This document shows, piece by piece, positions 1-62,104 of a DNA stretch of 64,000 bases. Under the pieces are notes generated by a model. It searched no databases. It was not told where the DNA came from and worked only from the letters and a program-made list of their open reading frames with translations. The translations under genes and the position numbers were made by a program. This stretch comes from Rebecca billardiae RCC1528 (lineage: Eukaryota; Protista; Haptophyta). How positions within the stretch are numbered: the stretch's first letter is position 1; each line of letters opens with the position of its first letter. Location of the stretch: the NCBI GenBank assembly GCA_965240325.2, contig OZ251244.1, positions 1,178,001 to 1,242,000 of the forward strand, read 5' to 3'.

Positions 1-48
1 GATGACGACGAAGCGGGTGCCATGCCGGATCGTTTGCGGGACGGCGGA

Positions 49-2474
49 CGGCAGCGCTAAATCAGCCCGGGCTGATTTAAGCTTATCTCAGCCCGGGCTG
101 ATTTAAGCCCTTAAATCAGCCCGGGCTGAGATAAGCTCGCGCGGAGCTTATCTCAGCCCGGGCTGATTTAAGGGCTTAAATCAGCCCAGCGGCTCGCGAC
201 TCGGCCACCGTGGACTCGGAGCGCACGTCGCGCGGTGCGGCCCGCCCGCTCCATGGCTGCACGCGCTGCTGTGTCTTCGGTGGCCACAGGGTGAAGTGCG
301 CTGAGTCTAGTGGCGGGCGCCCAGCTCCACCCACCCCCTTCTCCCTGGCCCGCCCCGCCTGCCCTCGCCCGCATCGGATGCCTTCCTCGCGCATGCAACT
401 CCACGGCGGCAACTCGGCTTGTGGACTTGCTGCCCGCATGAGAAGCATGCAGCCAACACCATGGACGCACCATCGACGTTCGCCAGTTGACCATGTCCGC
501 GCGTAGTCGCACGCGGGTGAACACGGCCCGTGCGCTACAGTCGGTTGTGTGCTGTTGCCATTGCACGTTGTTCAAAATGTGCTGAACGTTGCCACCGCGG
601 CCGCCGCGCGCGGGCGTACCGGTGCCAGCGGCACAGGCATGGGCACCGGCGCAGCTCCATGGACGATCATGGCGCTGCGGCTAGTGGGCGCGCCGACGCC
701 GGCACGCCCGCAGCTGTCGGCGCGCACGGCGAGCACGCAAAGCTCGCAGCGCGTGCCGCGGCTCAGGGGCTGGTGCGCACGGACAGCAAGCTAAGGTTGC
801 GGTGTGCGCCGCGGTCCGCACGCACGCAGCGGCCGCCGCATGCGCCACGCGCGCGGTGGCCGCCGCGCGCGCCGCGGTTGCCGCGCGCGCCGTGGCTGCC
901 GCGCGCGCCGCGGCGGACCAGCGCGCCGCGGCCGTGCGCGACGACCGAAGGCTAGTCTGTGGCGGATAGCGAGCGAGCGCGCCGCCGCGGCCAGTGAGCG
1001 CGCAGCGGCCGGCGAGCACGCTCAGCCTCATCGCGCAACTGTCACGTGTTGGCGCCAGGCTTGATGGGCACCTGCGGCGTTGGACCAATGGGCATCTGTG
1101 GCCCGTGCGGTGCGCGCTCGCCGGTTGCGGTGGCGCGCTCGCCAATACCTACGCATGCTGGCGCGGCCTGCTCACCGGTCGCGGTGGCGCAAGCCCCGGC
1201 TGCACCATCCATCCGCGCCGGTTGCGGCGCGCTCACTAGCCGCAGCGGCAAGCTCGCTATCCGCCACAGACTCGCCTTCGGTCGCCGTGCGCGGGGCGGT
1301 CGCGGCGCGTTGGTCGGCCTCGGCGCGCTCGCCAGCCGCGGCGCGCGCGGCAGCCGCGGCGCGCGCAGCAGCCACGGCGCGCTCGCCGGCCGGGCGCGAC
1401 GGCCGAGTTACGCTGTCTGCCGCCGTGGCGCGCTTACCGGCCGCAGCGCGCGTGGCAGCCGCGGCGCAATCGCCAGCCGCGCGGCGCGCGGCAGCCGCGG
1501 CGCGCTCACCGGCCGGGCGCGCTCAGCAGCCGCGGCGCGCTCGCCGGCCGCAGCGCGCTCGCCGGCTGCGGCGCGCAAGACGGCTGCGGCGCGCGCGGCG
1601 GCCGTTGTGTGCACGCGGACCACGGTGCGCGCGGCGACCTTGGCGTGCTCGCCAAGCGCGCCGAAAGCTGCGAGCGCGAGGGCGCCGGTGAGCCCACCAG
1701 CTGCGGCGCCACGACCGTCGACAGTGTATTACTCTGCCGAAGCGCCTGCCACGCTTGAGACGCAGCGAGCCGCACACCACAGCTGTCAGCTGATGGTCCA
1801 AGCTCGGTCATGAACCGGCAGCCGCCGCGCAGAGTAGTGCGCCGCGCGAAGGGACTGTTTCGATCTGACGGGATCGCGATGACTGGCTGATCCAGCGTCG
1901 AGCGTGACCGGCAAGTATGCCAAGCTGGGCAAGCACATGCCGCAACGCGCGAACGGTACAAGGGCAACGCGGTACAAGGGCGACGGCACACGGCAGACAG
2001 GTGCACGTGGGCCGTGGCCACATGCGTGCGATTACACATGACACACATGTACAGTACACGACGTACAAGTACCCGCGACCGTCGATGGTGGAATCGATGG
2101 TGGAACAATGGCGTTGGCTGAGGCCGTTGCATGCGCGAGGAAGGCATCCGATGCGGGCGAGGGCAGGCGGGGCGGGCCAGGGAGAAGGGGGTGGGTGGAG
2201 CTGGGCCCGCCACTAGACTCAGCGCACTTCACCCTGTGGCCACCGAAGACACAGCAGCGCGTGCAGCCATGGAGCGGGCGGGCCGCACCGCGCGACGTGC
2301 GCTCCGAGTCCACGGCGGCCGAGTCGCGAGCCGCTGGGCTGAGATAAGCGCTTATCTCAGCCCGGGCTGAGATAAGCTCGCGCGGAGCTTATCTCAGCCC
2401 GGGCTGATTTAAGGGCTTAAATCAGCCCGGGCTGAGATAAGCTTAAATCAGCCCGGGCTGATTTAGCGCTGCCG
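49..2474. mobile_element. Non-autonomous foldback/Mutator-like (MULE) DNA transposon with ~350-bp TIRs
   Basis: TIRs 49-399 and 2126-2474 are near-identical inverted copies. Exact 9-bp direct repeat GACGGCGGA at 40-48 and 2475-2483 (TSD). No recognisable transposase ORF inside. Confidence 0.88.
58..187. repeat. Array of palindromes (core TCAGCCCGGGCTGA) in left TIR; mirrored at ~2336-2465
   Basis: Four full cores plus a half core per end, with alternating TTTA/GATAA flanks. Perfect 44-bp-arm hairpin at 95-138/144-187. Confidence 0.95.
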
Positions 2475-23200: not shown

Positions 23201-23633
23201 CAATTCGCTCATGCACACAGATGCACAAACAATACCAAGCCCAAAATCACTCATAATCCAAGCTTAGTCCTCACAGACGAGCGCATATTGGATTGAGGGG
23301 GGGTGTCAAAGGAATCGCCAATCTACAGTGATTTCCAATTTCCAATCCAACATTTTACTCGCAGTCACACAGTGGCGGCGCGACCGCTGCGGCGGCGCTC
23401 GCACAAAATCCTCCAAAATCAACGACCTGAACCTCGATCATCCTAAAATACAGCAGGACAGCATGGCTGGCGGCGACCTGGCGGCGGCATCTGGAAGCAT
23501 TCTAGATGCTTCCGAAACTCGTGAACGAAACATGAGCCGATCACACAAAACAAGCTGAGCTCACCACCGCAAACAAGAGCCGAAGCTCGTCGACCGCGAC
23601 TCGACCGTCAAGCTCAAGACGCGTTCCCTGACA
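20259..23633 (+). mobile_element. Non-autonomous Gag-only LTR retrotransposon (TR-GAG-like, Copia-type Gag)
   Basis: LTRs 20259-20590 and 23304-23633 (TG...CA); 5-bp TSD GTGTC (20254-20258, 23634-23638); polypurine tract GAGGGGGGG at 23295-23303; no pol. Confidence 0.95.
20590..23094 (+). CDS. gag: Gag-like protein with C-terminal CCHC zinc knuckle (834 aa)
   Basis: CTHCGLKNHTAQQCWKLHP knuckle at the C-terminus; ORF fills the space between the LTRs. Confidence 0.8.
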   Translation: MLARCWENLGKDGDDENSGKDVNGHQPAPVAPLIGLKPGVGRAPGNAAQPSSAIARKCTPDYLAAALRGMQAEKNRQGEKLTLLRKPISSAYGPGNTADLNSGSHASSAIAPRVDWLHAESIKDHLEEEVRAQRGEEERCRSHPPPSRHSIRTHVVAQGISTTTARDLAPASAAEREAECPQLKECLAASESSNEVTERSGADVALDAAAADAAPTVEALEPADAARRAGLLAAANDSAVVTAVSLQPRAHDTVSESDRSNDDISTDECDSNDLYGLAEQTMLQDATTRDSVTASTSPNIHCQGRTKPIVFLEMTNKYVYPKIHGALAGLTMASEAELLATSDTSIREMTAAETAESSSGTYRLASNVGSAYDAGGASYTCLTAKPQQNQVGERDARAHASAASAITTPHSCKEEYSAEAAADAHASPLDRTSVKKPKEGTTASTRVTPRSKVERESPQSARDTSTNALESKKRDWIVIEGGVTDSNPTKKERVFMARESSAGVDTPATHKLTQSALKSKRAVHSAIRDALAEVSTYYKGKSSDVTPDIMDPKDSKLSGFQLIAKDKWVKDAAKIDPYKADNADANKIGSVYDRSAAAIFKQLKDSIEPQLFAYLESKLHISDPTKNYLDLALLLQIFERELKITTMSELRDEFLKLYPTKVSPIGASDIIKKSVEQVRSSRYGNLDDATMLVFKLYNSMHDHPQVYESVISHFGALTPEQCVDNTDQIMAQMEDAYKRHGSMKLLHQNNTKGRETENYSKIRQNADYQQGTRRRGDFEGAEVFAAQAQKAPANGESGPNNSDTGKRCTHCGLKNHTAQQCWKLHPELRPKAKE

Positions 23634-23776
23634 GTGTCACTCGACTCACGCTCAGGCAACGTCGTCCGGATGCGCCGGATGGTGCGAGGAGTGACGACCG
23701 ACTGAGTACTGACTAGCCAACTGACATTTACTGACCGCTGTCGCTGACGACGATGCCGCGCAGCTCGCAGCCCGAT

Positions 23777-24539
23777 TCATAATGAGGAGGGATGAGCCGC
23801 AGCAGGGCGCACCAGGGGCTCCGTGTCCGTTGCTGACCCAGCGCACGCCGTCGACTTCGCGCCCAGATGCTGAGCGAGCCATGCGAACCCAGCATGCACG
23901 CCCTCCGCATCGCCCGTGGCCGAGCACTCCTGCAACTCGAACGGATGTGCATGCCGCTCGTGCTCGTTCTCGTCAAAGAGCCCGCCTCTCTCGCTGAACC
24001 GCGAGGCCACCTGTTCCACTGGCATGGCGCCGGGCAGGTCCTGCTTGTTGGCGAGGATGAGCACCGGCGCGCGCTCGCGCAGCATCTGCCCGTCGCGGAG
24101 CGCCGCGCGCAGGTCATCGATCGCTCCGTCTAGCTGTGCGTGCGCGTGCGCGTCAATGACGTAGATGAACGCATCGTAATCGCGGTGATGCGCTTGCCAA
24201 AACGCCCGGTGCCGATCGGGGATGTCCCAGCACTCGAACTCGAGCCCGCTCACAAGCAGGGCCTCCACGTTGAACCCTGCGTGCGGTGCGTGAGTGGGCA
24301 CATGCCAGGCGGTGGTGGGCACAGGCCGCATCGGCGCTTGCACGCGCGCACCGCTGCGGGGTCACACCAACGGTGGGCATGGCAGAGACGACCATCCCCA
24401 TCTTCATGCGATACAGAATCGTCGTTTTGCCCGCAGCATCGAGCCCGAGCATGGCTACTCGCAGCCTTCTCCGCCGGAGAGATAGCCTGTGCAGGAAGCC
24501 GAAGCATCCGCACCAAGCGGATAAAGCCGCCGCCACCAT
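23777..24539 (-). CDS. Divergent ARF/ARL small GTPase (2 exons)
   Basis: GLDAAGKTT (G1), PTVGFNVE (G2), NKQD (G4), CSA (G5); intron 24277-24367. G3 reads WDIPDR rather than WDxGGQ. Confidence 0.85.
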
Positions 24540-48999: not shown

Positions 49000-51900
49000 T
49001 CACGTAGTCGGCTGCTGGGCGACTGAGTGGGCGAGCGGCGGGCGCGCACGCCAGAGGAATGACGGTCGGCGCGCGTGCGCACTGCCGTCCTCGCTGCTCC
49101 CCGCCCCGCGCCCGGCCGCGCCAGCCGTCTCGGCGGGCGCGGCGGCACCCGCCGCCGCAGAATCGCGGCGCTCTGTGCTGCTGCACGACAGTGCCCGCGC
49201 GCGGGCGGCGCGACCGGCACCGTCCGCGCGCGCGGGAGCGGGCACATCGAGAACTGCTATGCTCGCAAACGCTGCCTCGCTCCCGCCCGCCTGCGGCCGG
49301 CGCGCCACCCGCGGCGCGCGCGCAAGCCGCAGCGCGGCGAGCGCAGCTGGCGCGAGCGCGTCAAGCCCAAGTGTGGCGCGCGCGCCGCCGCTCGCTGCCT
49401 CCGCGTCGTCGGCGGCACTCGGTGCGGCGGCGGGTGCCGACGCGAGCGAGCCGCTGCTGTCCTTGATGCGTGCCGGCTTGGCGGGCGCGCGCGCGTGCTC
49501 GCTCGCCGCGCCCACAGCCCCGCCGCGCCGCCGCCGTCCGAGCGGCAGGACCGCGGCGGCCGCGGCGGCGGCGGCCGCGCCCCGTCGCTTCCCGACGCGC
49601 GCGGACCGCGGCGGGCTGTGCGCGCGCGCGCGCACCGCGGCCGTGCGCAGCACAAAGGCCGCCACCACGAGCGCGAGCTGCACGAGGCAAGCGCCCATGA
49701 GCAGCCCACCGAGCGCCACGCCGTGCGCGCGGGCAAACTCGAGGTGCGTGCTGACGAAACGGCCGTAACCGTCGAGCCCGGCGTCGCAGAAGTCCTCCCG
49801 GCACTCGCGCAGCGAGAAGCCGTCGACTCGCTCGTCCAGCAGCGCGCACACGCCGGGCTGCGCGGCGATCGTGCCGTCGTGCCCCGAGATGTACTCGCAG
49901 AAGGCGTCTGCCGACGGGTCGAGCGCGGCGACTCCGATCGCGCCCGCCGCGCCCGCGCCGGCGTGCACGGGCATGCACGGCAGCGCGCGCCGCGCGCCGC
50001 CGTCCGCAGCCGCCGAGCCGTTGCGCAGCGCGGCGGTGGCGTTGGAGCGGGGCGAGCAGCACAGCTGGTACGTCTGGCACACGAAGCTCTCCACGCGGCG
50101 CAGTGACGCGGAGCCTGGCACGCCGAACCAGCGGCCGCGCGTCACGGTGCCGTTGCCGCCGCCGCCGCCGTCGGTCGGCGCGCCTTCCTTGGACGCGAGC
50201 GTCGTGAGCGCGGCGTTTTCGATCGTGTCCAGCGAGTGGACCCAGTGCAGCACGACGCAGGCGAGGGCGAGCTGGCCGAGCAGCGCGAGCAGGCTGAGCC
50301 CGCCGTACGCGCCCAGCCCGCACGGCTGCAGCCGCGCCGCCGCGCGCAGCGCACCCACGTTAAGGCCCGCGCACCCGGCGCCGCTGAGCGCGAGCGCGAG
50401 CAGCGCGTTTTTCGACAGGAACTCCTCGGCGGTGGAATAGAAGGCGAGGCCGTACACGCCGAAGCCGGCGAGCGTGCCGCCCACCGCGACGCCGAGCAGC
50501 GCGAACGCGCGCACGACCAGCGCCGCGCGCGCGTCCCGCGGCGTGCGCGGGCACAGCGAGTCGGCCAGCCTCGCCCCGAGCGCGCGCGCGCGGTCAAGGG
50601 CACACAGCAGGCCGACGGCCGGAGGCACCATCAGGAGCAGCAGCACGAGCCACGAGCGCCAGCCCGCGTCGACGCGCTCGGGCAGCGCGGGCACGCCCGC
50701 CGCGCGCACCGAGCCCTCCGGCTTGCGCCCGCACTCGAGCACCTCCGCGTCCACGCCCGCCGCGAGCCCTACCACTGATGAAACGGCGCCATCGATGAGG
50801 CACTCCGCGTCACAATGGCCGCCGCCGGTGCTCCCGGGAGCGCCGCCGACTCCGGAGGGCGGTGCGGCGCCGTCGTCGTGGCTCGCGGCGGGCGGCTCGG
50901 CGCACGCCGTGGGAGCGCACATCGTCGTGTCCGCGACCACCGAGTCCAGTGTCGGCCACGCGCGCGCGCACAGCTCGGCCGCCGACGCGTTCTGCGCGAG
51001 CTGCACCGCCGCGCGGTGCGCGCGCGCCTCGCACCGGCGCGAGACGAAGTCGCAGCCCTGGTTGAGGCCCCACGAGATGCACTCGGCGGCGGAGTAGTTG
51101 GCGAGGTAGTGCCCCAGGTCCTCCAGCGCCGCGAGCGTCAGCGCCGACACCGCGAACGGCGCCTCGCCGTAAGACATCACGTCCTCGCGCAGCAGGCGTG
51201 TCTCGGCGTGCGACGCGCGCCCAAAGTCCGGGTACGACATCAGCGGGAACCCGGACCAGCCGCCCGGACCGGCGGGGTCGTCGCAGCCGAAGTAGGCGGC
51301 GGCGACGTCGAAGGTGCGCGTGCCCGGGAGGAAGTGCCACACCGACTCGAGCCCGTCGTCCTCCGCCCCGGACGACGACGACGACGGCGGCGCGGCGGAC
51401 GCGCCCGCGCCGCCGCGCGCGCGCGGCACGCGCAAGTCGGCAACGACGCGCCGCCGCGTGCCGTCCGGAGCGAACACGTTCGTCCAGTGCTCGATGGCGT
51501 AGCCGAGGCCGTGGAAGAGCTCGTGCAGCACGAGCGCGCGCGTCTGCCGCACCTCCGCCTCGCTCGCCGCGCCCCACGCCGCCGGCTCCCGCCCGAGCGC
51601 GTGCCAGTCGAAAACGACCACCACCGGGCGCGTGCGCTCGTCGAGCGCACATGAGGACCCAGTGCCGGCGACGCCGTCGACGGGTGGCGGGTGGCGGACG
51701 TACAGAAGCACGTCGACGTCGCCCGCGCCGGCGGGGTCGTCGCACAGCTGGTCGCGCACGCGCAGCGCGTGCAGCTTCGAGCAGTCCGCCGCGCACCGCG
51801 CGTCGCCCTCGCCCACCGCGGTGTAGAAGCCGATATAGGTCCCCACGGAGCGGCGCAGGCTGAGCGGACGACTCCCATCGCGCGCGCGCACGCGCAGGAA

Positions 51901-52617
51901 CGCGCGCGCGTCCGCGAGCGCGTGCAGCGTGGCGTTGATGGCGTACGCGCGCATCGGCTCGGTGAGCACGTCGGACGGCTCGCACTCCAGCCAGCAGTCC
52001 GACGAGAGCCCGCCGTCCGCGATGTGCGCGCGGTCGCACCGCTCCGAGCCGTCGGCTGGCGGCGCGTCGCGCGCGCGTGGCCAACCGACACGCACCCAGT
52101 CGCCCGCGCGGAAGCACACGGAGTGCGGCGCGGCGGTGTCTTCGTACAGCGCGTCGAACATCGGCTTGATCCGGATCGGTCGGGTGTTCGCCTCCGTCAG
52201 CACCTCGTCGCCCTCGTCCGCGCCGCCGCCCGCGTCGTCGTCGCCGGCGGCCGCGAGCCGGCGGCCGCGCCGCTGCAGCCACCACCACGCGGCCCGGAGG
52301 CGACCGGCCGGGCGCGCGGGCTCCTGAGGGTGCGCGTGGGGCAGCACGCCGTACGCCAGGCGCACGGCATGCCCGAGTGCCACCGCGGACACGTCGCGCT
52401 CCGTCCGCCCCGCGCGCGCGCCGAGCCGGCGGCGGCGCGCGGCCGCATCCCGTCTCGCCTCGCGCAGCTGCCGCCACACGCGCGCGCCGACCTCAGCCGA
52501 GTGCACGTCGAGCGGCGTGGGGAGCGTGGCGGTTGGCGTGCTCGGCGCATGCAACGCGGACGCTTCGAGCGCGAGCGCGAGCGCGAGGGCGACGGCGCCG
52601 CAACGGCCCGCGCGCAT
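49000..52617 (-). CDS. Leishmanolysin (M8/GP63) metalloprotease fused to a TM anchor and a tetraspanin-like 4TM domain (~1205 aa)
   Basis: Signal peptide; HELFHGLG (51525-51502), SHAETR...EDVMS Met-turn, ALTLAALEDLGHY.ANY...WG.NQGCDF; five C-terminal hydrophobic helices with YQLCCS loop. Confidence 0.88.
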   Translation of the reverse strand: MRAGRCGAVALALALALEASALHAPSTPTATLPTPLDVHSAEVGARVWRQLREARRDAAARRRRLGARAGRTERDVSAVALGHAVRLAYGVLPHAHPQEPARPAGRLRAAWWWLQRRGRRLAAAGDDDAGGGADEGDEVLTEANTRPIRIKPMFDALYEDTAAPHSVCFRAGDWVRVGWPRARDAPPADGSERCDRAHIADGGLSSDCWLECEPSDVLTEPMRAYAINATLHALADARAFLRVRARDGSRPLSLRRSVGTYIGFYTAVGEGDARCAADCSKLHALRVRDQLCDDPAGAGDVDVLLYVRHPPPVDGVAGTGSSCALDERTRPVVVVFDWHALGREPAAWGAASEAEVRQTRALVLHELFHGLGYAIEHWTNVFAPDGTRRRVVADLRVPRARGGAGASAAPPSSSSSGAEDDGLESVWHFLPGTRTFDVAAAYFGCDDPAGPGGWSGFPLMSYPDFGRASHAETRLLREDVMSYGEAPFAVSALTLAALEDLGHYLANYSAAECISWGLNQGCDFVSRRCEARAHRAAVQLAQNASAAELCARAWPTLDSVVADTTMCAPTACAEPPAASHDDGAAPPSGVGGAPGSTGGGHCDAECLIDGAVSSVVGLAAGVDAEVLECGRKPEGSVRAAGVPALPERVDAGWRSWLVLLLLMVPPAVGLLCALDRARALGARLADSLCPRTPRDARAALVVRAFALLGVAVGGTLAGFGVYGLAFYSTAEEFLSKNALLALALSGAGCAGLNVGALRAAARLQPCGLGAYGGLSLLALLGQLALACVVLHWVHSLDTIENAALTTLASKEGAPTDGGGGGNGTVTRGRWFGVPGSASLRRVESFVCQTYQLCCSPRSNATAALRNGSAAADGGARRALPCMPVHAGAGAAGAIGVAALDPSADAFCEYISGHDGTIAAQPGVCALLDERVDGFSLRECREDFCDAGLDGYGRFVSTHLEFARAHGVALGGLLMGACLVQLALVVAAFVLRTAAVRARAHSPPRSARVGKRRGAAAAAAAAAVLPLGRRRRGGAVGAASEHARAPAKPARIKDSSGSLASAPAAAPSAADDAEAASGGARATLGLDALAPAALAALRLARAPRVARRPQAGGSEAAFASIAVLDVPAPARADGAGRAARARALSCSSTERRDSAAAGAAAPAETAGAAGRGAGSSEDGSAHARRPSFLWRARPPLAHSVAQQPTT

Positions 52618-53632
52618 CCGCTCGACGGCCGGCCGGCGCGAAAAGTGAGGTCGCGCCGGGCGCGGACTGGTCCGCGCGCGCATCCTGGGCTCGCTCGCTT
52701 TCGGTGGCGGCAAATCTGGGATCGCGAGATCTTGCACTGCTGTTGAGTGTATCCGTTAGGTTACGGTAGGAGTACGTACGGGTACGGAGCGACGCAGAAT
52801 GGCTGCCGTTCAGCGGCGCCTCTTGCTTGGGTGTACTTTGTCCTCGGCAGAGGCCGCAAGGGCGATCAGACGGACCAGCGCCGGTGGGCATGTCGGCGGC
52901 TTGGCCTTTGTAATTGTCAGCAGATGTGACGGAGAAGGCCTGATGGTGTTTATTTCAGTTCAACCAGTGCTGGTGCGGCGCGATCGGTCGGATGCGCGCC
53001 GGTTTTGTCAGCTGGTCTCGGTACGAGTAGCAGGCTGTGTCGACGAGTGGTCTGCGCCGTGCGTGTGCGATGGTGATCTCTCCCACGTTGAGTTGCTCTA
53101 CCGCGCAGATGCCAGCTGCCCCTCGCGCGACCCTCGGATCGACTACCCGGGAGGCCACCAGGTGGACACTCGGTTCACGCGCGCTGCCGGGCACGCAAAC
53201 GGCCTGCACTCTCGGTCTCATGAGTCCGTGGGGCGTAGGCTCGCCGGGCGTCCGGCACTTGCGTAGTGGCTGACGCCGCGCCGCACGCATGCTCGCATGC
53301 GCATCGCCATGCGCGCTACGCATGCGGTGTCGCCACGTGCGCCTTCGGCAGTCATCGGCACGCTTCGTCACAGGTGGCAGTAGGTACTGACTAGTACCCA
53401 AGTAGTGCCCTGGATACAACAGCGGTTACAGGTATCATGACTAGGTACCCGGTGAGTTTGGTCAAGGACTTCTCTGGAGACTGAAATTGCGACGATCATA
53501 TGATGATACCAGCCTATTGATCAATGGCAGCATCGGCCCAATTCGAACCACAATCTCAAATCTCGCCGTTTATCGTGCGGCGGCCTGATTACGAATTCGT
53601 TGCGGATTCCCACCGCCGACGAGTCGACGACA

Positions 53633-56591
53633 GAGGCCACTCCACCGAAATCGAGCCCGTCCAGGGCTTCGGCCGCCCACTGGCGTCCAGGGCTTAGCCC
53701 TGGACGCGCCGAGCGCGTCCAGGGCTCCGCTCGCCAGCGCGAGATAGTATTGAGCTCATAGGCGATGCCGCCGCGCCGCGTGCGCGCGCTCCGTCTCGCG
53801 CTGGCTGCGGCCGCGAGCGCGTGCGGCGAGCCGTCGCGTGCGGTCGCGCACCGGCGCTGAGGTATGGTGTGCCCATCCGTGCCCTTGGCTCGTGCCCGCG
53901 CGCCCTCCTCCGCCGCTGCGTGGCGCGCGTGTGGTCGCGCCGCCTCGCTCGCTGGGCGCACCGAAAGCGCGAGCGCGCAACGAGTCACCTGTGGCGTGTC
54001 GGACCCAGCGCGTGCGCGCCTGGCGTGTGGTTTGTGTTTGACATGGCCTTGGTCACGCGCGGCGCCGGCCGTGCCCAGCGTCTGACCGCGCGCAACGCGC
54101 ATAGTACTGGTGGTCCCGGCTGGGTCGAGCCGACCCCTCGGGGCTCGGCGGCACCCAGCCACTCGTAGGCGGCCGCGATGGGTCGACGCGTCGGATGGGT
54201 GGCGGCTACACACCATGCTGGTCGCGCACTGCCGCGTGCAGGGCGGTTGCACGGTGACAAGTGCCCCCGCGATCGTGCCGCGCTCGGGTACGAACAGGAG
54301 CAGTATGTTGCATGCGTGCCGCCGGCAGGTGGCGAGCTGGGGCGTGCTGGTCGGTGTGGCTGACGGGCGCGCTCGCGCGCGTGGCATGAGCGAGCGCGCC
54401 GCCGCCCAAGCGTGCCGCCCACGCCGCGCGCCGCGCGCCGCGCGCCGCGCGGCCTACGTCGCGTCGGCGCTCGCGCGGCCGGCAGCTCCGGACGGCAGCG
54501 TGGCCGGAAGGCGGCACGGGCACCATGCTGCTCAAGGCTGGCAAACAAGCTGCAGTAGTCGTCCCTCATCTTGGCATACGGAAACAGCTAGCACGCATGA
54601 TGAGATGGATACACAGCAGTTCAGCAGTCTGCATGCTCCGTGACCGTGACGGGGTATTCGGAAAGTGTTCAGCTGACAAATCTCGCCTGCCTGAGCTATC
54701 TGTCAGGCTGTGTGCGTCTCTTCTTCTTAGTCAGTGTTGTGCTCAGGCCGGCCACCGTAGAAGGGTGGGAGCTGGCGAACTTCTCCACCGGGTACCGAGC
54801 CTATCATAGCCATCAGCGCGCGCATACTGTAGCAGCGGTTCAGCCTTGTCACTGGCTAGCATCCCGTACTTGGTAGCTGCCGAGCAGCTCCGCGCGCTGA
54901 GCGTCGTGTTCAGCTGTGATGTATGATGAGCAGCGCAGCTTGCTCGCACCACGCGCGCACCCTCGCGTGCACCCACTAGACCAGTGTTGATGTGAGCCAC
55001 CGACAGTGATAGGTCGGCACGAATGTGTGCAACAGAAGCCTCGCTAGGAACTGCTGTCATGAAAGTGCTGTCAGCTGACGCTCCAGTGAATCGCTTGTTA
55101 CGCACTGCTTACAATATCATTCCATTTCCCACAGTCGTTCATCAGACGCCGTGGCCGTGGCAGGCGCCAACGCCACAACTGACGCCACTCTAGGCTCCAT
55201 GCTACTTCATTGAGGGCGTGGGCCCGCGCTACATGCTCAAACCAGCCGCGGCGAGCATCAGGTGCTTGAGGCGTGCGTGCGCTTGCAGCCGCTCAGAAGT
55301 ACAGTATTGAAGGCAGTGCCGCCACCGAGCCCGTGCAGCGTCCGAGCTACGCATCTCGACTCTGGCGCATGCGCAGGCTGCCGTAAGCCTCTGGGTCTCC
55401 ACCACAACGGGAGGAGGGGCGATGTATCACCTCGGTGCGTGTGCATACCTTCTGTTCACGTGTCTTGCGACCGGCCATCTTCATAGTCATCTACCCGAGC
55501 CTGCGCCAAGGGTTTGCGCCGCGGACGTCAGTCAGCCCGCTGTGCTGATATCACCGCAGAATCCGTGGGCAATGACGTACTTCAGGGTACGAGAAGACAC
55601 GCGGCATGCGGACGCCCATAGACGCAAGGCTGTGGCTATCAACCTCTTCACCCGCCGCCCATTTCGCGTACTAGTAAGGACCAGCTCTGCAGCTGGCACA
55701 CGACAGCCACTCGGACCAGTCACGCTGCCGTCCGGAGCTGCCGGCCGCGCGAGCGCCGACGCGACGTAGGCCGCGCGGCGCGCGGCGCGCGGCGTGCGGC
55801 GTGGGCGGCACGCTTGGGCGGCGGCGCGCTCGCTCATGCCACGCGCTCGAGCGCGCCCGTCAGCCACACCGACCAGCACGCCCCAGCTCGCCACCTGCCG
55901 GCGGCACGCATGCAACATACTGCTCCTGTTCGTACCCGAGCGCGGCACGATCGCGGGGGCACTTGTCACCGTGCAACCGCCCTGCACGCGGCAGTGCGCG
56001 ACCAGCATGGTGTGTAGCCGCCACCCATCCGACGCGTCGACCCATCGCGGCCGCCTACGAGTGGCTGGGTGCCGCCGAGCCCCGAGGGGTCGGCTCGACC
56101 CTAGCCGGGACCACCAGTACTATGCGCGTTGCGCGCGGTCAGACGCTGGGCACGGCCGGCGCCGCGCGTGACCAGGGCCATGTCAAACACAAACCACACG
56201 CCAGGCGCGCACGCGCTGGGTCCGACACGCCACAGGTGACTCGTCGCGCGCTCGCGCTTTCGGTGCGCCCAGCGAGCGAGGCGGCGCGACCACACGCGCG
56301 CCACGCAGCGGCGGAGGAGGGCGCGCGGGCACGAGCCAAGGGCACGGATGGGCACACCATACCTCAGCGCCGGTGCGCGACCGCACGCGACGGCTCGCCG
56401 CACGCGCTCGCGGCCGCAGCCAGCGCGAGACGGAGCGCGCGCACGCGGCGCGGCGGCATCGCCTATGAGCTCAATACTATCTCGCGCTGGCGAGCGGAGC
56501 CCTGGACGCGCTCGGCGCGTCCAGGGCTAAGCCCTGGACGCCAGTGGGCGGCCGAAGCCCTGGACGGGCTCGATTTCGGTGGAGTGGCCTC
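53633..56591. mobile_element. Unclassified non-autonomous element with ~870-bp TIRs and 5-bp TSD
   Basis: TIRs 53633-54502 and 55721-56591 (about five differences); direct repeat CGACA at 53628-53632 and 56592-56596; termini GAGGCC...GGCCTC. Confidence 0.9.
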
Positions 56592-56724
56592 CGACACGCG
56601 TCGTCAAACGCACTCACGCACCACTCATTAGCCCCTGTGCCGCTGTGCGTGCCCAGCACTGGTGTAGTGGTGGGCTCCCACGCGCTTCGCCGCCGCCCAA
56701 CTCGACGCAGCCCAGGCCTCGAGG

Positions 56725-59700
56725 ATGGCGGCGCCGAGTCGCAAGTCCGTGTCCAAAGCGTGGGCCTCGGTGCTCGATGGCGACGGCCCCGAGCCGGCCG
56801 GCACGCGCAACCTGCTCGAGTCGCCCGCGAGCGCGCACATCACCGCGCTCGCCTGTGTCGTCGGCTTCGCGGTGGCTCTCGCCGCCGAGTTTGCGTTCAC
56901 GCCGCGCGAGTGGCGCGCGCCGCTGCTCCCGGTGGAGGCGAGCGTGGCGGGCTTTTCGGTCGCCGTCTTCGCCGCGAGCATCTCCATCCAGCTCATCAAC
57001 GCCTTCTTCGACGCGCGCGAGTCGGTGCGGCTGCAGGCGCGCGTCGTGATCGCTGTGAACGGGGTCGCGCTCGCGGCGGACGCCATCATGCTGTGGCTGC
57101 CCACGCCGATCGTGCTCGACCCGATCACGGGCGGGCGCGTGCACCTCACCCGCTGGGTCGAGTTCGGCGTGCTCGGCGTCGGCCAGACCTGGATCGTGTG
57201 TGCGCTCGACTCGCCGTCGCACGCGCTCGCGCTCCGGACGGCGCTGCTGACAGGACTAAGCACCTCGTGCGGCTTCTTCTTCCCGCTGATGCCGGGCCCG
57301 TGGTCGTACGCCGCGCTGATGGCGTTCTCCTTCCTCACCTACTTCCCCATCTTCGCGCGCGCCGCGGAGAAGCGCGAGGCCTTCGACAACCTGCCCGCCG
57401 ACGGGCTCACGGCGTTTGCGCAGCGGCGCGTGCGCGCGACTGTCGCCCTTAACATGACTCGGCTGTGCGCCGTGCTGTGGACGACGCTGCCCGTGGCGTA
57501 CTTCGCGCTGTGGGGCGTGCGCCACGCGCGGCAGACGGCGCGCCTCGAGCCCGACGGCCTCGTCGCGCAGCTCCACTTCATCGTCGACACCTCCATCAAC
57601 GTCATCCTCAAGCTGTCGTACGCGCATGTGCTCTCAGGCGCGCACGTCACGGCCGCAAGCGCCGCGCAGGGCCAGTCGGCGACGGCGCTGCGCGACTCGA
57701 TGGAGGTGCTGTGGGCGCAGTACGGGCACGTGCTCCTCGTCTCGAGCCGCGTCTCCAACACCCGCGCGCACACCATCGCCTCCGCCGGCCTCGCCGAGCT
57801 CATCGGCGAGGCGAGCGCACAGCCGTGGATTCGCGGCCACGCACACGGCGTGCAGTCGACCGCGGACGATGTCGACTCGATCTCCGGACCGGACTGCACC
57901 GGACTCGGCGGCGCGGGCGCGAGCCCGTCGGACGCGCTCGAGGCGGTGGTGCGCCGCGCGTGGCACGCGGCGTCCACCGCCGACGGCCCGTGCACCGTCC
58001 AGTGCACGCTGCCCGGCGGGCCCGGCGGCGAGGGCCGGCCGGTCGAGGTGCACGCTGGCGTCGCGCCCAACACAGCGCTGCTGGTGATCGCGCTGCGCGA
58101 CCTCACGACCAAGGTGGCGCTGACGCAGGCGCGCGAGGAGCTCGAGGCGGAGCGCTCGGCGTCGGAGCAGGTGATCGCGCAGCTCGCGCGCGAGAAGGAC
58201 GCCGACATCAACCGCTTCACCCGGCACGAGGTCAAAAACGGCATGCTTGCCGCGCTCGGCGTGTGCGACGCGCTTCGGGAGATGTCGGAGCGCGCGCTCG
58301 CCGCAGGGGGCGCGCGCGGCGCGCCGGCCGGCGGCGGCGGGCTGAGCAAGGGCGACGGGGCGGGGGCGGGGGGTGCGCCGGGCTTGACGCGGCAGAGCAG
58401 CGCGGACGAGACGCGGCAGAGCAGCGCGGACGAGCGCCTCGCCTCCTCCATGCACCGCGGGCTCAACGAGGTGACCATTGGCCTTCAGCGCACGCTCAAC
58501 GTCGTACTGGCCGAGGCGATGGCGCGCGAGGTGGCGCACGGCGCGTACACGCCGCAGGTGGAGGCGGTGCACCTGGTCGAGCTGCTGCGTGGCGCGCTCT
58601 CGTCGTCGAGCAGCGCGGCGCGCTTCCCGATCCTCACGCAGCCGGAGCCGCTCCCCCAGCTCGAGCTTGACCCGAGACTTGTCTTCCACATCTATCGCCT
58701 TGCGCTCGCCAACGCGTGCCGCTGGGGGCAGCCGGGCGGGCTCGTCTTCACCGAGCTGGCTCATATGCACGGCCGGCTCACGCTGCGCGTGATCAACAAG
58801 CCCGGCCCGGAGCACGCGCAGCTGGTGCGGCTGATCGACCCGACGGGCATGGTCTTCGAGGACGAGCAGCGGCTGCACTCCGAAGCCGTCGCGCTGCGCA
58901 CCCGTCCGGCCGGCGCCTTGCGGCTGGAGCGCGGCTCCTCCGGCTCCAGCGCCGAGAGCGACGACGGCGGCAGCAGCCAGGCGAGCTCGCCCGGCAGCTC
59001 GCCGCGGATCGGCAGCCGCTCGGCCACGGGCGTGTCGCACGGCAACGCGTGGTCGATGCGCGAGTGCGCGCGCGCGCTGAGCGGCTCCTGCTCGATTTCG
59101 TTTGAGCCCGATCAGACCGTTTTTGAGCTCGTCTGCCCCGCGCCCGTCCGCCTGCCGCCCGAGGCGGTGGCCGCCTTTGCCGTGCCGCCCGGCACCGTGG
59201 GCATCGGGATTGACGACTCTCGCGTGCAGCGCGCGATCCTCGGCCGGATCTTCGGGCTGCTCGGCGTGGAGAAGGAGAACACCTTCGTCCTGGGCGGCAC
59301 GGACGAGGAGATGCTCGGCTTTGCCGACCTCGTGCTACAGCTCGTCCGCCGCTACCCGAGTCGGCACTTCCTCATCATCGCCGACGAGAACCTGGAGCTC
59401 GCGCACGCCGGGAGCGAGATGGTCTCTGGCTCGGAGGCGCTCGCGCGCGTGCAGGCCGAGCTCGAGCCCTCGCTGCACGCGCGGCTGCTGCTCGTCGTGC
59501 GCTCGGCGAACGATTCAGCGGACGACACGGCGGTGTACCTGCAGCGCGCGCACGCGGTGATGCCCAAGCGCGGCTTCTCCAAGTCCGCCATCCTGGAGGA
59601 CGCCTCGACGCTGTGGCGCGAGCGGTTCGGCGCGCCGAAGGCCGACGAGCCCTCCGACTCCGAGGACCAGATCGCCGTGCGCCAGCTCGAGCGGGACATC

Positions 59701-60099
59701 ATCGACACGGTCCACTCGCTTCTCGTTTCCATCGACGGTGCACTCGGCGCCGACTGGCCGACACTCACCAAGCTGCTGCACCACCTGAAGGGAGAGCTCC
59801 TCTCCATGCCGTCCGACGACGAGGGCTCGCGCTTCGACCGGCTCGTCGCGTCGATCGAGTCGGTCCGCAGGCTGGACGACAAGCCGTCCGACTTGGCGGC
59901 GGCGTGGGCGGCGCTGCGCGAGGCGGTGTGCGAGACGCTCTGCCGATGCGCTGACGAGCGCGACGGCGGCGCGCGGGCGAGCGGGGAGCGCACGCCGTCG
60001 GCCGCCGCCACCGAACTGCACGCCATGCCCACCATCCGCCGCTCGTTGGAGAAGGCGGGCATCACGGCGGTCACGCCGCTGTGGCGCGCGCTCGCCTAG
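56725..60099 (+). CDS. Microbial-rhodopsin-like hybrid histidine kinase: 8TM - PAS-like - HisKA - HATPase - REC - Hpt (1124 aa, intronless)
   Basis: Helix C RWVEF, helix F LWTTLPV, helix G NVILK (K296); H-box FTRHEVKNG (H501), N-box ALANACRWG; REC GIDDS...IIADENL (D887)...RSAND...MPK; Hpt LHHLKG (H1019). Confidence 0.85.
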   Translation: MAAPSRKSVSKAWASVLDGDGPEPAGTRNLLESPASAHITALACVVGFAVALAAEFAFTPREWRAPLLPVEASVAGFSVAVFAASISIQLINAFFDARESVRLQARVVIAVNGVALAADAIMLWLPTPIVLDPITGGRVHLTRWVEFGVLGVGQTWIVCALDSPSHALALRTALLTGLSTSCGFFFPLMPGPWSYAALMAFSFLTYFPIFARAAEKREAFDNLPADGLTAFAQRRVRATVALNMTRLCAVLWTTLPVAYFALWGVRHARQTARLEPDGLVAQLHFIVDTSINVILKLSYAHVLSGAHVTAASAAQGQSATALRDSMEVLWAQYGHVLLVSSRVSNTRAHTIASAGLAELIGEASAQPWIRGHAHGVQSTADDVDSISGPDCTGLGGAGASPSDALEAVVRRAWHAASTADGPCTVQCTLPGGPGGEGRPVEVHAGVAPNTALLVIALRDLTTKVALTQAREELEAERSASEQVIAQLAREKDADINRFTRHEVKNGMLAALGVCDALREMSERALAAGGARGAPAGGGGLSKGDGAGAGGAPGLTRQSSADETRQSSADERLASSMHRGLNEVTIGLQRTLNVVLAEAMAREVAHGAYTPQVEAVHLVELLRGALSSSSSAARFPILTQPEPLPQLELDPRLVFHIYRLALANACRWGQPGGLVFTELAHMHGRLTLRVINKPGPEHAQLVRLIDPTGMVFEDEQRLHSEAVALRTRPAGALRLERGSSGSSAESDDGGSSQASSPGSSPRIGSRSATGVSHGNAWSMRECARALSGSCSISFEPDQTVFELVCPAPVRLPPEAVAAFAVPPGTVGIGIDDSRVQRAILGRIFGLLGVEKENTFVLGGTDEEMLGFADLVLQLVRRYPSRHFLIIADENLELAHAGSEMVSGSEALARVQAELEPSLHARLLLVVRSANDSADDTAVYLQRAHAVMPKRGFSKSAILEDASTLWRERFGAPKADEPSDSEDQIAVRQLERDIIDTVHSLLVSIDGALGADWPTLTKLLHHLKGELLSMPSDDEGSRFDRLVASIESVRRLDDKPSDLAAAWAALREAVCETLCRCADERDGGARASGERTPSAAATELHAMPTIRRSLEKAGITAVTPLWRALA

Positions 60100-61059: not shown

Positions 61060-62104
61060 ATGGTCGTCAAGTCGCTCAAGGACCTGCAGAGCGACGAGCC
61101 CGTGGGCTCGGCGGGGCCCTCGGGCGCGCCCATCGACGGCGAGAAGCTGCCCACGGACTACAAGGGCCTGTACCACGAGAAGCAGGTGCGCTCCGTTCTT
61201 CCCGCGCGGCGCCGTTCGCACGCGCGGGCCGCGCGCGCGGCGCGAGGGGCTGACCGACCTGGCGCCGCCGTCCGCGCGGGTGTGGCCGGCGCTGGGGCAG
61301 ATCGGCAGCCTCTGTGCTGTGCACGCGCTCAACAACCTGCTCCAGGGCCCCGAGGTAAACGAGGTGACGCTCGCCGAGCTCGCACACGGTCTGGACGTGC
61401 AAGAGCGCGCGGCGATGCAGGGCCTCGGGCTGGAGGCGGAGTCGGGCAACGTGCGCGCGGACGGGTTCTTCTCGGTGCAGGTCATCTCGAGCGCGCTGCA
61501 GCAGCTCGGGCTCAGCTGCACGCCCATCGGCGCCGAGTCGGCGCGCGCGGCCGCGAGCGCGCCACAGAAGGAGGCAGGCTTCATCTGCAATCGCTCGCAG
61601 CACTGGTTTTCTATTCGGCGGCTCGGGAGCTACTGGTTCGACCTGAATAGCATGCTCCCGACGCCGCGGCTGCTCACCGACGCGCAGCTCGGCTCGGCGC
61701 TGCAGCAGCTCGGCGCCAGCGGCTACTCCGTCTTTGTCGTGCGCGGCGCGTTCCCGCCGGCGCCGATTGAGCAGAGACCCGACCGGCTCCGCGCGGCGGC
61801 GGACGCGTGTCGGGATGGCGGCGGCGGCGGCGGCGGTGGCGCGGTCTCGCGCGGGGGCGGCGACGGCGGCGTCGACTTCAACGCGTTCAGCGGGCAGGGC
61901 TACTCGCTCTCCGCCACGCCCGCCCCCGCCGCCCCGACCGCCGCCGCACTGCCCGACAACATAGCGGAGATCCAGCAGTCGGACCCCGAGCTAGCGGCCG
62001 CGCTCGTGGCGTCGCTTGGCGACGCGGGCGCGGGCGCGCCGCCCAAGCCGGCCGAGGACTCGGCGGAGGAGATGCGCCGGAAGCGGCTCGCGCGCTTCGG
62101 CTGA
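61060..62104 (+). CDS. ATXN3: Josephin-domain deubiquitinase (ataxin-3-like) with SHP, UIM and VIM-like motifs (2 exons)
   Basis: YHEKQ|IGSLCAVHALNNLLQG, GFFSVQVI, FICN..HWF.IR, DLNS, GYSVFVVRG; intron 61186-61300. Confidence 0.9.

What the first reader, a model, noticed from the sequence alone, without database searches (positions are those of the whole stretch)
56725..60099. Putative light-gated complete phosphorelay in one polypeptide: rhodopsin-HK-REC-Hpt
Seen: eight hydrophobic helices. The last seven align by eye to bacteriorhodopsin landmarks: R143/E146 (BR R82/D85), the helix D Gly, the helix E Ser, W252/P256 (BR W182/P186) and K296 in helix G (BR K216, the Schiff-base Lys). The BR D212 position is Asn (N292) and BR W86 is Phe. 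These are followed by a PAS-like region, a coiled coil, an H-box (H501), a divergent HATPase, a receiver with its DD/D887/S/K set intact and a C-terminal HxLKG Hpt (H1019). Established: histidine-kinase rhodopsins are known mainly from green algae, usually ending in REC plus cyclase, and enzyme rhodopsins carry an extra TM0. Inference: this is a distinct architecture, with an algal HEVKNG/RSAND-type kinase and a His-Asp-His relay ending in Hpt. The single acidic counterion would predict unusual spectral tuning. It could be an uncharacterised photoreceptor system in a red-plastid alga.
Basis: partly seen in the sequence, partly recalled or inferred. Interest (0 to 1): 0.9.

Follow-up and report, generated by a model that had tools for sequence, protein, structure and literature searches.

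The report
Cryptic rhodopsin-histidine kinase relay gene
This intact, intron-free gene of a haptophyte-like alga joins an eight-helix retinal-type light-sensor domain to a histidine kinase, a receiver and a probable phosphotransfer domain, and it belongs to a large haptophyte and diatom family that standard domain searches miss and that I found described in no paper.

Summary
Window 56725-60099 (+) is one uninterrupted 1124-codon gene with third-position GC of 0.94 throughout and flat flanks.

Pfam finds nothing in the protein. An exhaustive search nevertheless finds 651 relatives at E<=1e-3, 210 of them at E<=1e-30.

A family profile of residues 30-325 hits the Salpingoeca rhodopsin phosphodiesterase structure at E 7e-6. 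The AlphaFold model (pLDDT 92) superposes on that structure at Z 24 over 274 residues, including the extra helix TM0. All 50 best solved-structure matches are microbial rhodopsins.

K296 maps to the retinal lysine. R143 and E146 map to BR R82 and D85. N292 replaces the second carboxylate, which only 3 of 63 relatives do.

The kinase H-box (H501) and the receiver quintet (D830, D831, D887, S927, K948) are intact. The C-terminal LHxLKG motif (H1019) is probably an HPt, but the support is sub-threshold.

This copy's ATP-binding domain deviates from its own family at L659 and in the G2 box, and carries a 45-residue lid insert, so its kinase competence is uncertain.

The scan has already reported paralogues of this family on other pieces of the same genome. 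No RNA data were available, and no function has been shown.

Verdict: a new variant of the enzyme-rhodopsin / histidine-kinase-rhodopsin kind.

The parts
56725..60099 (+). Whole gene: single exon, 1124 codons plus stop
   Evidence: ORF listing and translation. GC3 is 0.94 throughout against flat flanks. Relatives give collinear single-HSP tblastn matches. The same gene was called on a 6-kb Logan contig.
56824..56898 (+). TM0, the extra N-terminal transmembrane helix (aa 34-58)
   Evidence: AF2 helix at model residues 5-29, pLDDT above 95. It is covered by the superposition on Rh-PDE 7d7q_B (model 1..296, Z 24.1), but not by 7-TM rhodopsins, whose matches start at about model residue 36-41.
56929..57696 (+). 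Seven-helix microbial-rhodopsin core plus the cytoplasmic extension of helix G (aa 69-324)
   Evidence: AF2 model with pLDDT 92 and pTM 0.89. The Foldseek top 50 are all microbial rhodopsins. VIA Z is about 20 to SRII, BR and AR2. The family profile hits Rh-PDE at E 7e-6, then BR-like, cruxrhodopsin and ChRmine.
57151..57162 (+). Helix C motif R143-W-V-E146, equivalent to BR R82...D85 and Rh-PDE ...E164
   Evidence: The profile alignment places the family RWaEW on Rh-PDE RYAEW. Family conservation is R 60/63 and E 57/63. The next residue is F147 where the family has W in 56/63.
57598..57612 (+). Helix G motif N292-V-I-L-K296: Asn at the BR D212 / Rh-PDE D292 position, Lys at the Schiff-base position
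   Evidence: The family DvlaK aligns to DVLAK of a solved bacteriorhodopsin-like protein and to ADYAAK of Rh-PDE. The end offsets of the BR and SRII superpositions put model residue 267 on BR K216 and NpSRII K205. K occurs in 59/63 relatives, D/E in 56/63 and N in 3/63.
57700..58089 (+). Linker module between opsin and kinase, PAS-like (aa 326-455)
   Evidence: Support is weak. PAS_9 is hit in 4/39 relatives, best E 0.004. There is no hit in solved structures. Language-model neighbours of the whole protein are PAS-HK-REC families.
58090..58644 (+). Dimerisation / His-phosphotransfer helices with the H-box FTRHEVKNG (H501 at 58225-58227) and a G/A/S-rich loop insert
   Evidence: Family conservation is H 39/41, E502 41/41 and N505 41/41. 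The loop insert has GC3 0.96.
58645..59160 (+). Divergent catalytic ATP-binding domain: N-box N663 kept, L659 in place of the family Asn, G1 as in the family, G2 SHGNAW, 45-residue S/G-rich lid insert (aa 728-772)
   Evidence: HATPase_c is hit in 32/42 relatives but not in this protein. The family profile hits YycG, HprS, KdpD and other histidine kinases at E 3e-4 to 5e-3.
59188..59634 (+). Receiver domain (aa 822-970), phospho-acceptor D887 at 59383-59385
   Evidence: D830, D831, D887, S927 and K948 are all present and conserved in 39-40/40. Response_reg is the commonest Pfam hit among relatives (9/40, best E 0.0046). CheY and receiver structures are the top but non-significant PDB profile hits.
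59677..59949 (+). Probable HPt domain (aa 985-1075), candidate phospho-His H1019 at 59779-59781
   Evidence: In the LHxLKG motif, H occurs in 31/38, K in 37/38 and G in 38/38. Pfam Hpt is sub-threshold in 7/38, best E 0.0036 in the nearest relative. UniRef names that relative 'HPt domain-containing protein'. Of 100 named language-model neighbours, 95 are Hpt clusters. Against this, there is no PDB profile hit.

Best explanation
The gene encodes a membrane photoreceptor of the enzyme-rhodopsin type. An eight-helix opsin has TM0 plus seven helices, with both ends in the cytoplasm, and binds retinal at K296. Helix G continues as a long cytoplasmic helix into a PAS-like module and the coiled-coil helices of a dimeric histidine kinase. 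Retinal isomerisation would change the kinase/phosphatase balance at H501. The phosphoryl group would then pass to D887 in the fused receiver, on to H1019 in the C-terminal HPt, and from there to a separate response regulator. What is shown: an intact coding gene, a rhodopsin fold with TM0, the lysine and helix-C residues in register, family-wide conservation of all phosphorelay residues, and membership of a large haptophyte/diatom family. What is inferred: retinal binding, light control and its sign, actual phosphotransfer, and the HPt fold. By analogy with green-algal 2c-Cyclops, I favour a kinase that is active in the dark and inhibited by light. This copy has Asn at the position that is the sole counterion in Rh-PDE. 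I therefore expect E146 to act as counterion, or an unprotonated or shifted Schiff base, which would make this a spectrally distinct paralogue.
For: Coding status. Rhodopsin identity: the family profile hits Rh-PDE at E 7e-6, and 12 of 14 PDB hits are rhodopsins. The AF2 model has pLDDT 92. The Foldseek top 50 are all microbial rhodopsins. VIA gives Z 24.1 over 274 residues to Rh-PDE including TM0, and Z about 20 to SRII and BR. The top Swiss-Prot hits are sensory rhodopsins. K296, R143, E146 and W252 sit in columns conserved at 90-98%. Kinase. Receiver. HPt. Family size and taxa: 651 relatives, including Diacronema, Chrysotila, Corethron, Cylindrotheca and Seminavis and several MMETSP transcripts. 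The query falls in a haptophyte clade. Precedent for the mechanism: 2c-Cyclop is 8-TM, ATP-dependent and light-inhibited (PMC6284317). The Rh-PDE structure and its counterions are described in PMC7644710.
Against: The protein itself has no Pfam hit at E<=1 and no phmmer hit to any solved structure. All recognition depends on family profiles and a predicted model. This copy has L659 where 37/41 relatives have the first N-box Asn. It has SHGNAW where they have S.GDGAW, plus a 45-residue low-complexity lid insert. A G-box mutation abolishes activity in Cr2c-Cyclop1. The pocket residues W86 and Y185 of BR are F147 and L255 here. The HPt and PAS modules lack significant matches. H1019 is not universal in the family (31/38). 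No RNA run was listed for this gene, so its expression is unknown.
Confidence: 0.65

Rival explanations
1. The protein is a light sensor with a crippled kinase. The opsin binds retinal, but this paralogue cannot autophosphorylate. It would act as a phosphatase or phosphotransfer scaffold, or only as a heterodimer with a kinase-competent paralogue that phosphorylates H501 in trans.
For: L659 is unique among 41 relatives. The G2 box has lost the family's GDG, and a 45-residue S/G-rich insert sits in the ATP lid. HATPase_c is detected in 32/42 relatives but not here. Several paralogues exist in the same genome according to earlier scan notes. Histidine kinases phosphorylate within dimers, and G533A abolishes activity in Cr2c-Cyclop1. 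The end branch is longer than the family median, 1.15 against 0.68.
Against: The Mg-ATP Asn N663, the G1-equivalent N691/P693/G694/H697, the F-box and H501 are all retained. ATP lids vary in length. The nearest relative, from Diacronema, has an equally long branch. The whole domain keeps strong codon bias and an open frame.
Confidence: 0.22
2. The protein has an opsin-fold sensor that does not use retinal. The eight-helix domain would sense something else, such as a lipid, membrane state or ion, or merely anchor the kinase.
For: Pfam Bac_rhodopsin is not matched by any of 42 members. Several BR pocket residues are replaced: W86 by F, T89 by L, Y185 by L and D212 by N. Opsin-related proteins without chromophore are known from established knowledge.
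Against: The helix-G Lys is kept in 59/63 relatives, together with the R/E pair of helix C and the helix-F Trp (62/63). That pattern has no obvious reason to persist without a Schiff base. The closest solved structure is a retinal-binding enzyme rhodopsin that also carries Glu at the D85 position.
Confidence: 0.08
3. The gene is a decaying or silent duplicate: an unexpressed, recently inactivated paralogue whose frame happens to remain open.
For: No RNA run was listed. The gene has deviant kinase motifs, two low-complexity inserts and a perfect 24-nt in-frame duplication. Both amino-acid differences between the two alleles lie in an insert.
Against: The frame is 1124 codons long and open, with GC3 0.94 everywhere, including the inserts. 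All phosphorelay residues and the Schiff-base Lys are intact. Two alleles differ at only 3 of 6012 bases.
Confidence: 0.05

Closest known systems
Rhodopsin phosphodiesterase (Rh-PDE) of Salpingoeca rosetta, PDB 7CJ3 / 7D7Q
   Same: It is the best sequence-profile and structural match (E 7e-6; Z 24.1 over 274 residues). It shares the eight helices with TM0, Glu at the BR D85 position, a D-x-x-x-K helix G (family consensus), and helix G continuing into a cytoplasmic linker helix that carries the enzyme.
   Different: The output here is a histidine kinase relay, not a phosphodiesterase. Identity is only about 14%. This copy has Asn where Rh-PDE has D292, its sole counterion.
Histidine-kinase rhodopsins / two-component cyclase opsins of green algae (CrHKR1, Ot-HKR, Cr2c-Cyclop1)
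   Same: Both have an 8-TM opsin covalently followed by a histidine kinase and a receiver in one chain. Phosphotransfer is controlled by light in 2c-Cyclop. This is the same functional class of enzymerhodopsins.
   Different: In 2c-Cyclop the kinase directly follows the opsin (K298 to H352). Here a PAS-like module of about 130 residues intervenes (K296 to H501). There is no cyclase, and the chain ends in a probable HPt. The hosts are haptophytes and diatoms rather than green algae. A direct sequence relationship to green-algal HKRs was not tested, because no reference sequence was obtainable with these tools. The AFDB clusters named 'histidine kinase' matched more weakly (E 3e-5 to 1e-4) than the family's own clusters.
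Unorthodox hybrid sensor kinases (HK-REC-HPt, e.g. ArcB, BarA) and the multi-PAS HK-REC-HPt proteins reported in Emiliania, Guillardia and oomycetes
   Same: The module order is kinase, receiver, HPt in one chain, giving a His-Asp-His relay that ends on a separate response regulator. Kabbara et al. 2018 report such fusions in haptophytes and cryptophytes.
   Different: Those proteins have PAS or periplasmic sensors, not an opsin. Their domains pass the Pfam thresholds used in such surveys, whereas this family does not.
Sensory rhodopsin II with transducer HtrII and CheA
   Same: A rhodopsin controls a histidine kinase. SRII is among the best structural matches for the 7-TM core (Z 20.4; top Swiss-Prot hits).
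   Different: That system is non-covalent and works through a separate transducer and CheA. It has seven helices and is archaeal.

Membership tests
Microbial (type-1) rhodopsin | Seven-helix fold with microbial-rhodopsin topology | tested here: met
   AF2 model with pLDDT 92. The Foldseek top 50 are all microbial rhodopsins. VIA Z is 20-24.
Microbial (type-1) rhodopsin | Lysine in the middle of helix G at the Schiff-base position | tested here: met
   K296 lies in the family D-x-x-x-K motif, which aligns to DVLAK of a solved BR-like protein. Superposition offsets place it on BR K216 and NpSRII K205. It is conserved in 59/63 relatives.
Microbial (type-1) rhodopsin | Match to the curated family model (Pfam PF01036 Bac_rhodopsin) | tested here: not met
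   No hit at E<=1 for the protein, and none at E<=0.01 in 42 relatives. Only the family profile against solved structures and the fold comparison detect the relationship.
Microbial (type-1) rhodopsin | Covalent retinal chromophore and a photocycle | not testable with these tools
   This needs expression with all-trans retinal and spectroscopy.
Enzyme rhodopsins (8-TM, type Ib) | Additional N-terminal helix TM0 and a cytoplasmic enzyme fused after helix G | tested here: met
   TM0 is at aa 34-58 and superposes on TM0 of Rh-PDE (model 1..296 aligned). Kinase modules follow.
Histidine-kinase rhodopsin / 2c-Cyclop (green algae) | Opsin followed directly by HK, then REC, usually a C-terminal nucleotide cyclase | tested here: not met
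   A PAS-like module of about 130 residues lies between opsin and H-box. No cyclase is found by Pfam in the protein or its relatives. The C-terminus is HPt-like. The architecture of 2c-Cyclop is taken from PMC6284317.
Histidine-kinase rhodopsin / 2c-Cyclop (green algae) | Common descent of opsin and kinase parts with CrHKR1 / Ot-HKR | not tested
   No green-algal HKR sequence could be obtained. None appeared among the 150 best hits listed.
Histidine kinase (HisKA + HATPase_c) | H-box histidine in a helical hairpin | tested here: met
   H501 lies in RHEVKNG. Conservation is H 39/41, E 41/41 and N 41/41. No Pfam HisKA hit was found.
Histidine kinase (HisKA + HATPase_c) | N, G1, F and G2 boxes of the ATP-binding domain | tested here: inconclusive
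   N663 and the F-box are kept. G1 is the family's own variant N.PG..H rather than D.G.G. L659 replaces the family Asn, and G2 is SHGNAW against the family S.GDGAW. HATPase_c is hit in 32/42 relatives but not here. The family profile hits solved kinases at E 3e-4.
Receiver domain (CheY-like) | Acidic pair, phospho-Asp, Ser/Thr and Lys in order | tested here: met
   D830, D831, D887, S927 and K948 are conserved in 39-40/40. Pfam Response_reg is only sub-threshold (9/40, best E 0.0046). CheY is top but non-significant in the PDB search.
HPt domain | H-x-x-K-G motif on a four-helix bundle | tested here: inconclusive
   The motif L-H1019-H-L-K-G is present. Family conservation is H 31/38, K 37/38 and G 38/38. 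Pfam Hpt is sub-threshold in 7/38, and 13/38 hit DUF7032 instead. A source names the nearest relative as HPt-containing. Language-model neighbours are Hpt clusters. There is no PDB profile hit.
PAS domain | Recognisable PAS fold between opsin and kinase | tested here: inconclusive
   PAS_9 is hit in 4/39 relatives, best E 0.004. The family profile has no hit in solved structures.

The most novel reading that the evidence does not exclude
Diatoms and haptophytes, the dominant marine phytoplankton, carry a large and so far unrecognised class of rhodopsin photoreceptors. In it an Rh-PDE-like 8-TM opsin drives a complete His-Asp-His phosphorelay through a PAS-like coupler. Within that class, paralogues such as this one (Asn at the main counterion site, Phe for the helix-C Trp) would be spectrally distinct sensors, for instance UV-absorbing with an unprotonated Schiff base or strongly shifted. 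One cell would then read light colour through a set of kinase rhodopsins.
Probability: 0.35. Interest if true: 0.85.

Novelty: new variant of a known kind. Interest (0 to 1): 0.7.

Why it matters
Known histidine-kinase rhodopsins come from green algae. Surveys of marine eukaryotic photoreceptors and of eukaryotic histidine kinases found essentially none in diatoms or haptophytes: rhodopsin-histidine kinase transcripts were 'not detected' in PMC8017926, and only three kinases were counted in Emiliania in PMC6324907.

The family recovered here is invisible to Pfam. It is nevertheless large, with 651 clusters at 50% identity, and relatives are present in transcriptomes (MMETSP entries).

If these proteins are light-regulated kinases, a major light-signalling route in the ocean's main primary producers has been overlooked. 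They would also offer a new scaffold for optogenetic control of phosphorelays.

This locus adds a natural counterion variant (N292). It is a ready-made test of colour tuning and Schiff-base protonation in the family.

Tried and rejected
- Pfam on the whole protein: no family at E<=1.
- phmmer of aa 25-332 against solved structures: nothing at E<=10.
- AlphaFold on the single sequence was useless (pLDDT 44). The useful model needed the 40-sequence alignment.
- Both word-indexed homologue searches, one with the protein and one with the 42-sequence alignment, returned only the query itself. Low-complexity words probably filled the candidate list. The exhaustive search was what found the family.
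- The RNA-run search listed no run. Read laying was therefore never used, and expression is untested.
- The profile of the C-terminal module against solved structures gave only designed helical bundles and spectrin, with no HPt.
- The profile of the linker module gave nothing.
- The receiver profile gave CheY-type hits only at E 0.2-0.8.
- The ESM-Atlas shape search returned one bacteriorhodopsin cluster (TM 0.69/0.84) and otherwise noise.
- I considered that the two low-complexity inserts might be unspliced introns. I rejected this because their GC3 is 0.96-1.0.
- I considered that the antisense ORFs listed might be genes. I rejected this because their codon-position signal mirrors the sense frame.
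- A findings search for a retinal-forming carotenoid oxygenase in this genome gave nothing.


Full report
**1. The gene is real**

Window 56725-60099 (+) is an ATG-to-stop ORF of 1124 codons. GC at the three codon positions is 0.71/0.52/0.94. The third-position value stays at 0.91-0.98 in every 300-nt window from the first codon to the last. The 1.5 kb on either side shows no periodicity.

The two low-complexity stretches (aa 527-577 and 728-772) have GC3 of 0.96 and 1.0. They are therefore translated sequence, not retained introns. An open frame of this length has a chance probability of about 2e-10 at the local composition.

Three relatives each align to the window in one collinear tblastn HSP spanning 56806-59919. 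There is one copy in the window and no intron.

The same gene was called on a 6-kb contig of a public assembly. That contig differs from the window at 3 of 6012 bases: one synonymous change, plus R733Q and E735Q inside the lid insert. This looks like a second allele.

No RNA run was listed for the gene. Read laying was not used, and expression is untested.

**2. Standard tools see nothing; the family does exist**

Pfam gives no family at E<=1, and phmmer against all solved structures gives nothing. Two word-indexed homologue searches returned only the query.

The exhaustive phmmer scan of 1.84 billion representatives found 651 proteins at E<=1e-3 and 210 at E<=1e-30. Many are 1000-1250 aa long and match along the whole length. 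The best is 37% identical.

Named members are:
- Diacronema lutheri (KAG8462663.1, the nearest relative)
- Chrysotila / Pleurochrysis
- the diatoms Corethron hystrix, Cylindrotheca fusiformis and Seminavis robusta ('expressed unknown protein')

Several are MMETSP transcripts, so relatives are transcribed.

In a maximum-likelihood tree of 42 full-length members, the query pairs with the Diacronema protein (SH-aLRT 95). That pair sits inside a 7-row clade that also holds the Chrysotila sequence (100). All named diatom sequences fall in the other, 35-row clade.

The neighbouring Josephin (ataxin-3-like) gene is 77% identical to an MMETSP transcript. It is 69% identical to a partial Pavlovales sp. 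CCMP2436 protein and 58% identical to Diacronema lutheri. The genome is therefore a pavlovophyte-like haptophyte, but not D. lutheri. This is an inference from two genes.

**3. The N-terminal domain is a microbial rhodopsin of the 8-TM enzyme-rhodopsin type**

- **Profile search.** A profile of 40 family members (query aa 30-325) hits the two crystal structures of Salpingoeca rosetta rhodopsin phosphodiesterase at E 7e-6 and 1e-5. Of the 14 hits at E<=10, 12 are rhodopsins, including BR-like, cruxrhodopsin-3, ChRmine and a cation channelrhodopsin.
- **Model.** AlphaFold with that alignment gives pLDDT 92 and pTM 0.89. It shows eight long helices and a beta-hairpin between helices B and C. The single-sequence model had failed.
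- **Foldseek against the PDB.** All 50 best matches are microbial rhodopsins, and the top four are Rh-PDE chains.
- **VIA-align.** Z is 24.1 over 274 residues to 7d7q_B, covering model residues 1-296 and so including TM0 and the post-helix-G linker. Z is about 20 for seven-helix rhodopsins, whose alignments begin at model residue 36-41.
- **Swiss-Prot models.** Sensory rhodopsins come first.
- **AlphaFold DB clusters.** The two best are unnamed 855- and 964-aa proteins at TM 0.85-0.88. These are evidently family members.

**4. Residue register**

The HMM alignment puts the family motif RWaEW on Rh-PDE's RYAEW. It puts the family D-v-l-a-K on DVLAK of a solved BR-like protein and on ADYAAK of Rh-PDE.

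In Rh-PDE, Lys296 carries the retinal, and Glu164 and Asp292 correspond to BR Asp85 and Asp212. Asp292 is the sole counterion, while Glu164 stays protonated (PMC7644710).

The end offsets of the BR superpositions are -51 in five entries, and the NpSRII offset is -62. These place model residue 267 (query K296) on BR K216 and on NpSRII K205, assuming no gap within helix G. NpSRII Lys205 is named as the retinal lysine in PMC6798134.

Conservation across 63 non-redundant family opsin domains:

| BR position | Family residues (of 63) | This protein |
|---|---|---|
| R82 | R 60 | R143 |
| D85 | E 57 | E146 |
| W86 | W 56, F 5 | F147 |
| W182 | W 62 | W252 |
| D212 | D 38, E 18, N 3 | N292 |
| K216 | K 59 | K296 |

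N292 is a minority state, shared with a Corethron protein and one other. Only P256 is not a family feature, since the family has Val there.

**5. The cytoplasmic part**

- **H-box.** The sequence is FTRHEVKNG. H501 is conserved in 39/41, E502 in 41/41 and N505 in 41/41.
- **ATP-binding domain, family level.** HATPase_c is detected in 32 of 42 relatives, best E 6e-7, but not in this protein. The family kinase profile hits solved histidine kinases (YycG, HprS, KdpD, VicK-like and bacteriophytochrome kinases) at E 3e-4 to 0.1.
- **ATP-binding domain, this copy.** The Mg-ATP Asn (N663), the F-box and the family's G1-equivalent viN.PG..H are kept. Three features deviate. L659 replaces an Asn present in 37/41 relatives, and no other member has Leu there. 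The G2 box reads SHGNAW against the family S.GDGAW. A 45-residue Ser/Gly-rich insert sits in the ATP lid. In Cr2c-Cyclop1 a single G-box substitution abolishes activity. Kinase competence of this paralogue is therefore open.
- **Receiver.** All five catalytic residues are present (D830, D831, D887, S927, K948), and each is conserved in 39-40 of 40 relatives. Response_reg is the commonest Pfam hit among members but is sub-threshold (9/40, best E 0.0046). CheY-type structures lead the PDB profile hits at non-significant E-values.
- **C-terminal module.** The motif is L-H-x-L-K-G (H1019). H occurs in 31/38, K in 37/38 and G in 38/38. Pfam Hpt is hit sub-threshold in 7/38, with the best hit (E 0.0036) in the Diacronema relative covering the motif. 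UniRef names that relative 'HPt domain-containing protein'. Of 100 named language-model neighbours of aa 975-1085, 95 are Hpt clusters. Against this, 13/38 members hit DUF7032 more strongly. The PDB profile search found no HPt. I rate HPt at about 75%.
- **Linker module (aa 326-455).** It is only weakly PAS-like: PAS_9 in 4/39, nothing in the PDB, and PAS-HK-REC language-model neighbours for the whole protein.

**6. Mechanism**

The anatomy is an Rh-PDE-like 8-TM opsin. Its helix G runs on as a long cytoplasmic helix (model helix 249-295) into a coupler and a dimeric kinase. This is the arrangement by which enzyme rhodopsins transmit retinal isomerisation (PMC7644710; PMC6798134).

The most likely function is light control of H501 phosphorylation, followed by transfer to D887 and then H1019, and finally to a free response regulator. 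By analogy with 2c-Cyclops, the kinase may be active in the dark and inhibited by light (PMC6284317). The sign is a guess.

The family consensus keeps the Rh-PDE counterion pair and this copy has Asn at the D292-equivalent. Either E146 takes over as counterion, or the Schiff base is unprotonated or strongly shifted. CrHKR1 shows that a kinase rhodopsin can rest with an unprotonated, UV-absorbing Schiff base (PMC8818676). These points are inference.

**7. Comparison with what is known, and novelty**

The class is known: enzymerhodopsins, including histidine-kinase rhodopsins, from green algae (PMC12558739). HK-REC-HPt fusions with PAS sensors are also known from Emiliania, Guillardia and oomycetes (PMC6324907).

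I found three things in none of the nine literature searches:
- an opsin joined to a PAS-like coupler, kinase, receiver and HPt
- any kinase rhodopsin in diatoms or haptophytes
- this family under any name

A metatranscriptome survey states that rhodopsin-histidine kinase transcripts were not detected. That is what one expects if detection relied on standard models.

I could not test descent from green-algal HKRs. I therefore file the gene as a new variant of a known kind, not as an HKR family member.

**8. Earlier scan findings**

The scan has already reported this family on other pieces of the same genome, with at least eight first-reader notes and five follow-ups. Those notes are consistent with what I found independently here.

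This locus adds three things: the Asn counterion variant, the family-deviant ATP-binding motifs, and an intron-free gene model.

Noticed in passing
window 58387-58434: A perfect 24-nt tandem duplication (two identical copies) encodes TRQSSADE twice. It lies inside the low-complexity loop between the two kinase dimerisation helices. It is in frame and evidently recent.
   Followed up: partly
window 57201, 58922, 58927 versus L001: A public 6-kb contig of the same gene differs at three bases. One is synonymous, and two give R733Q and E735Q in the ATP-lid insert. This is probably the second allele of a diploid genome.
   Followed up: partly
window 61280-62104 (+): A Josephin / ataxin-3-like deubiquitinase gene (PF02099) lies 1.2 kb downstream. 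Its best named relatives are an MMETSP transcript (77%), Pavlovales sp. CCMP2436 (69%, partial) and Diacronema lutheri (58%). I used it only to place the organism.
   Followed up: partly
window 49003-52755 (-): A long open frame of about 1250 codons with strong codon bias (GC3 0.91). I did not examine it.
   Followed up: no
window 20001-24000: GC drops to 0.55-0.60 against about 0.70 elsewhere, with strong AT skew (+0.19 to +0.22) and negative GC skew. This compositional island was not examined.
   Followed up: no
family alignment A5 (C-terminal module): In 7 of 38 relatives the candidate phospho-His of the LHxLKG motif is Q, F, L or R, while the K and G stay conserved. Some members may therefore carry a pseudo-HPt. 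In addition, 13/38 members match Pfam DUF7032 better than Hpt.
   Followed up: partly
window 52756-56667: About 3.9 kb upstream of the gene has no frame with coding-type codon bias on either strand. The many ORFs listed there are what a 70% GC sequence gives by chance.
   Followed up: partly
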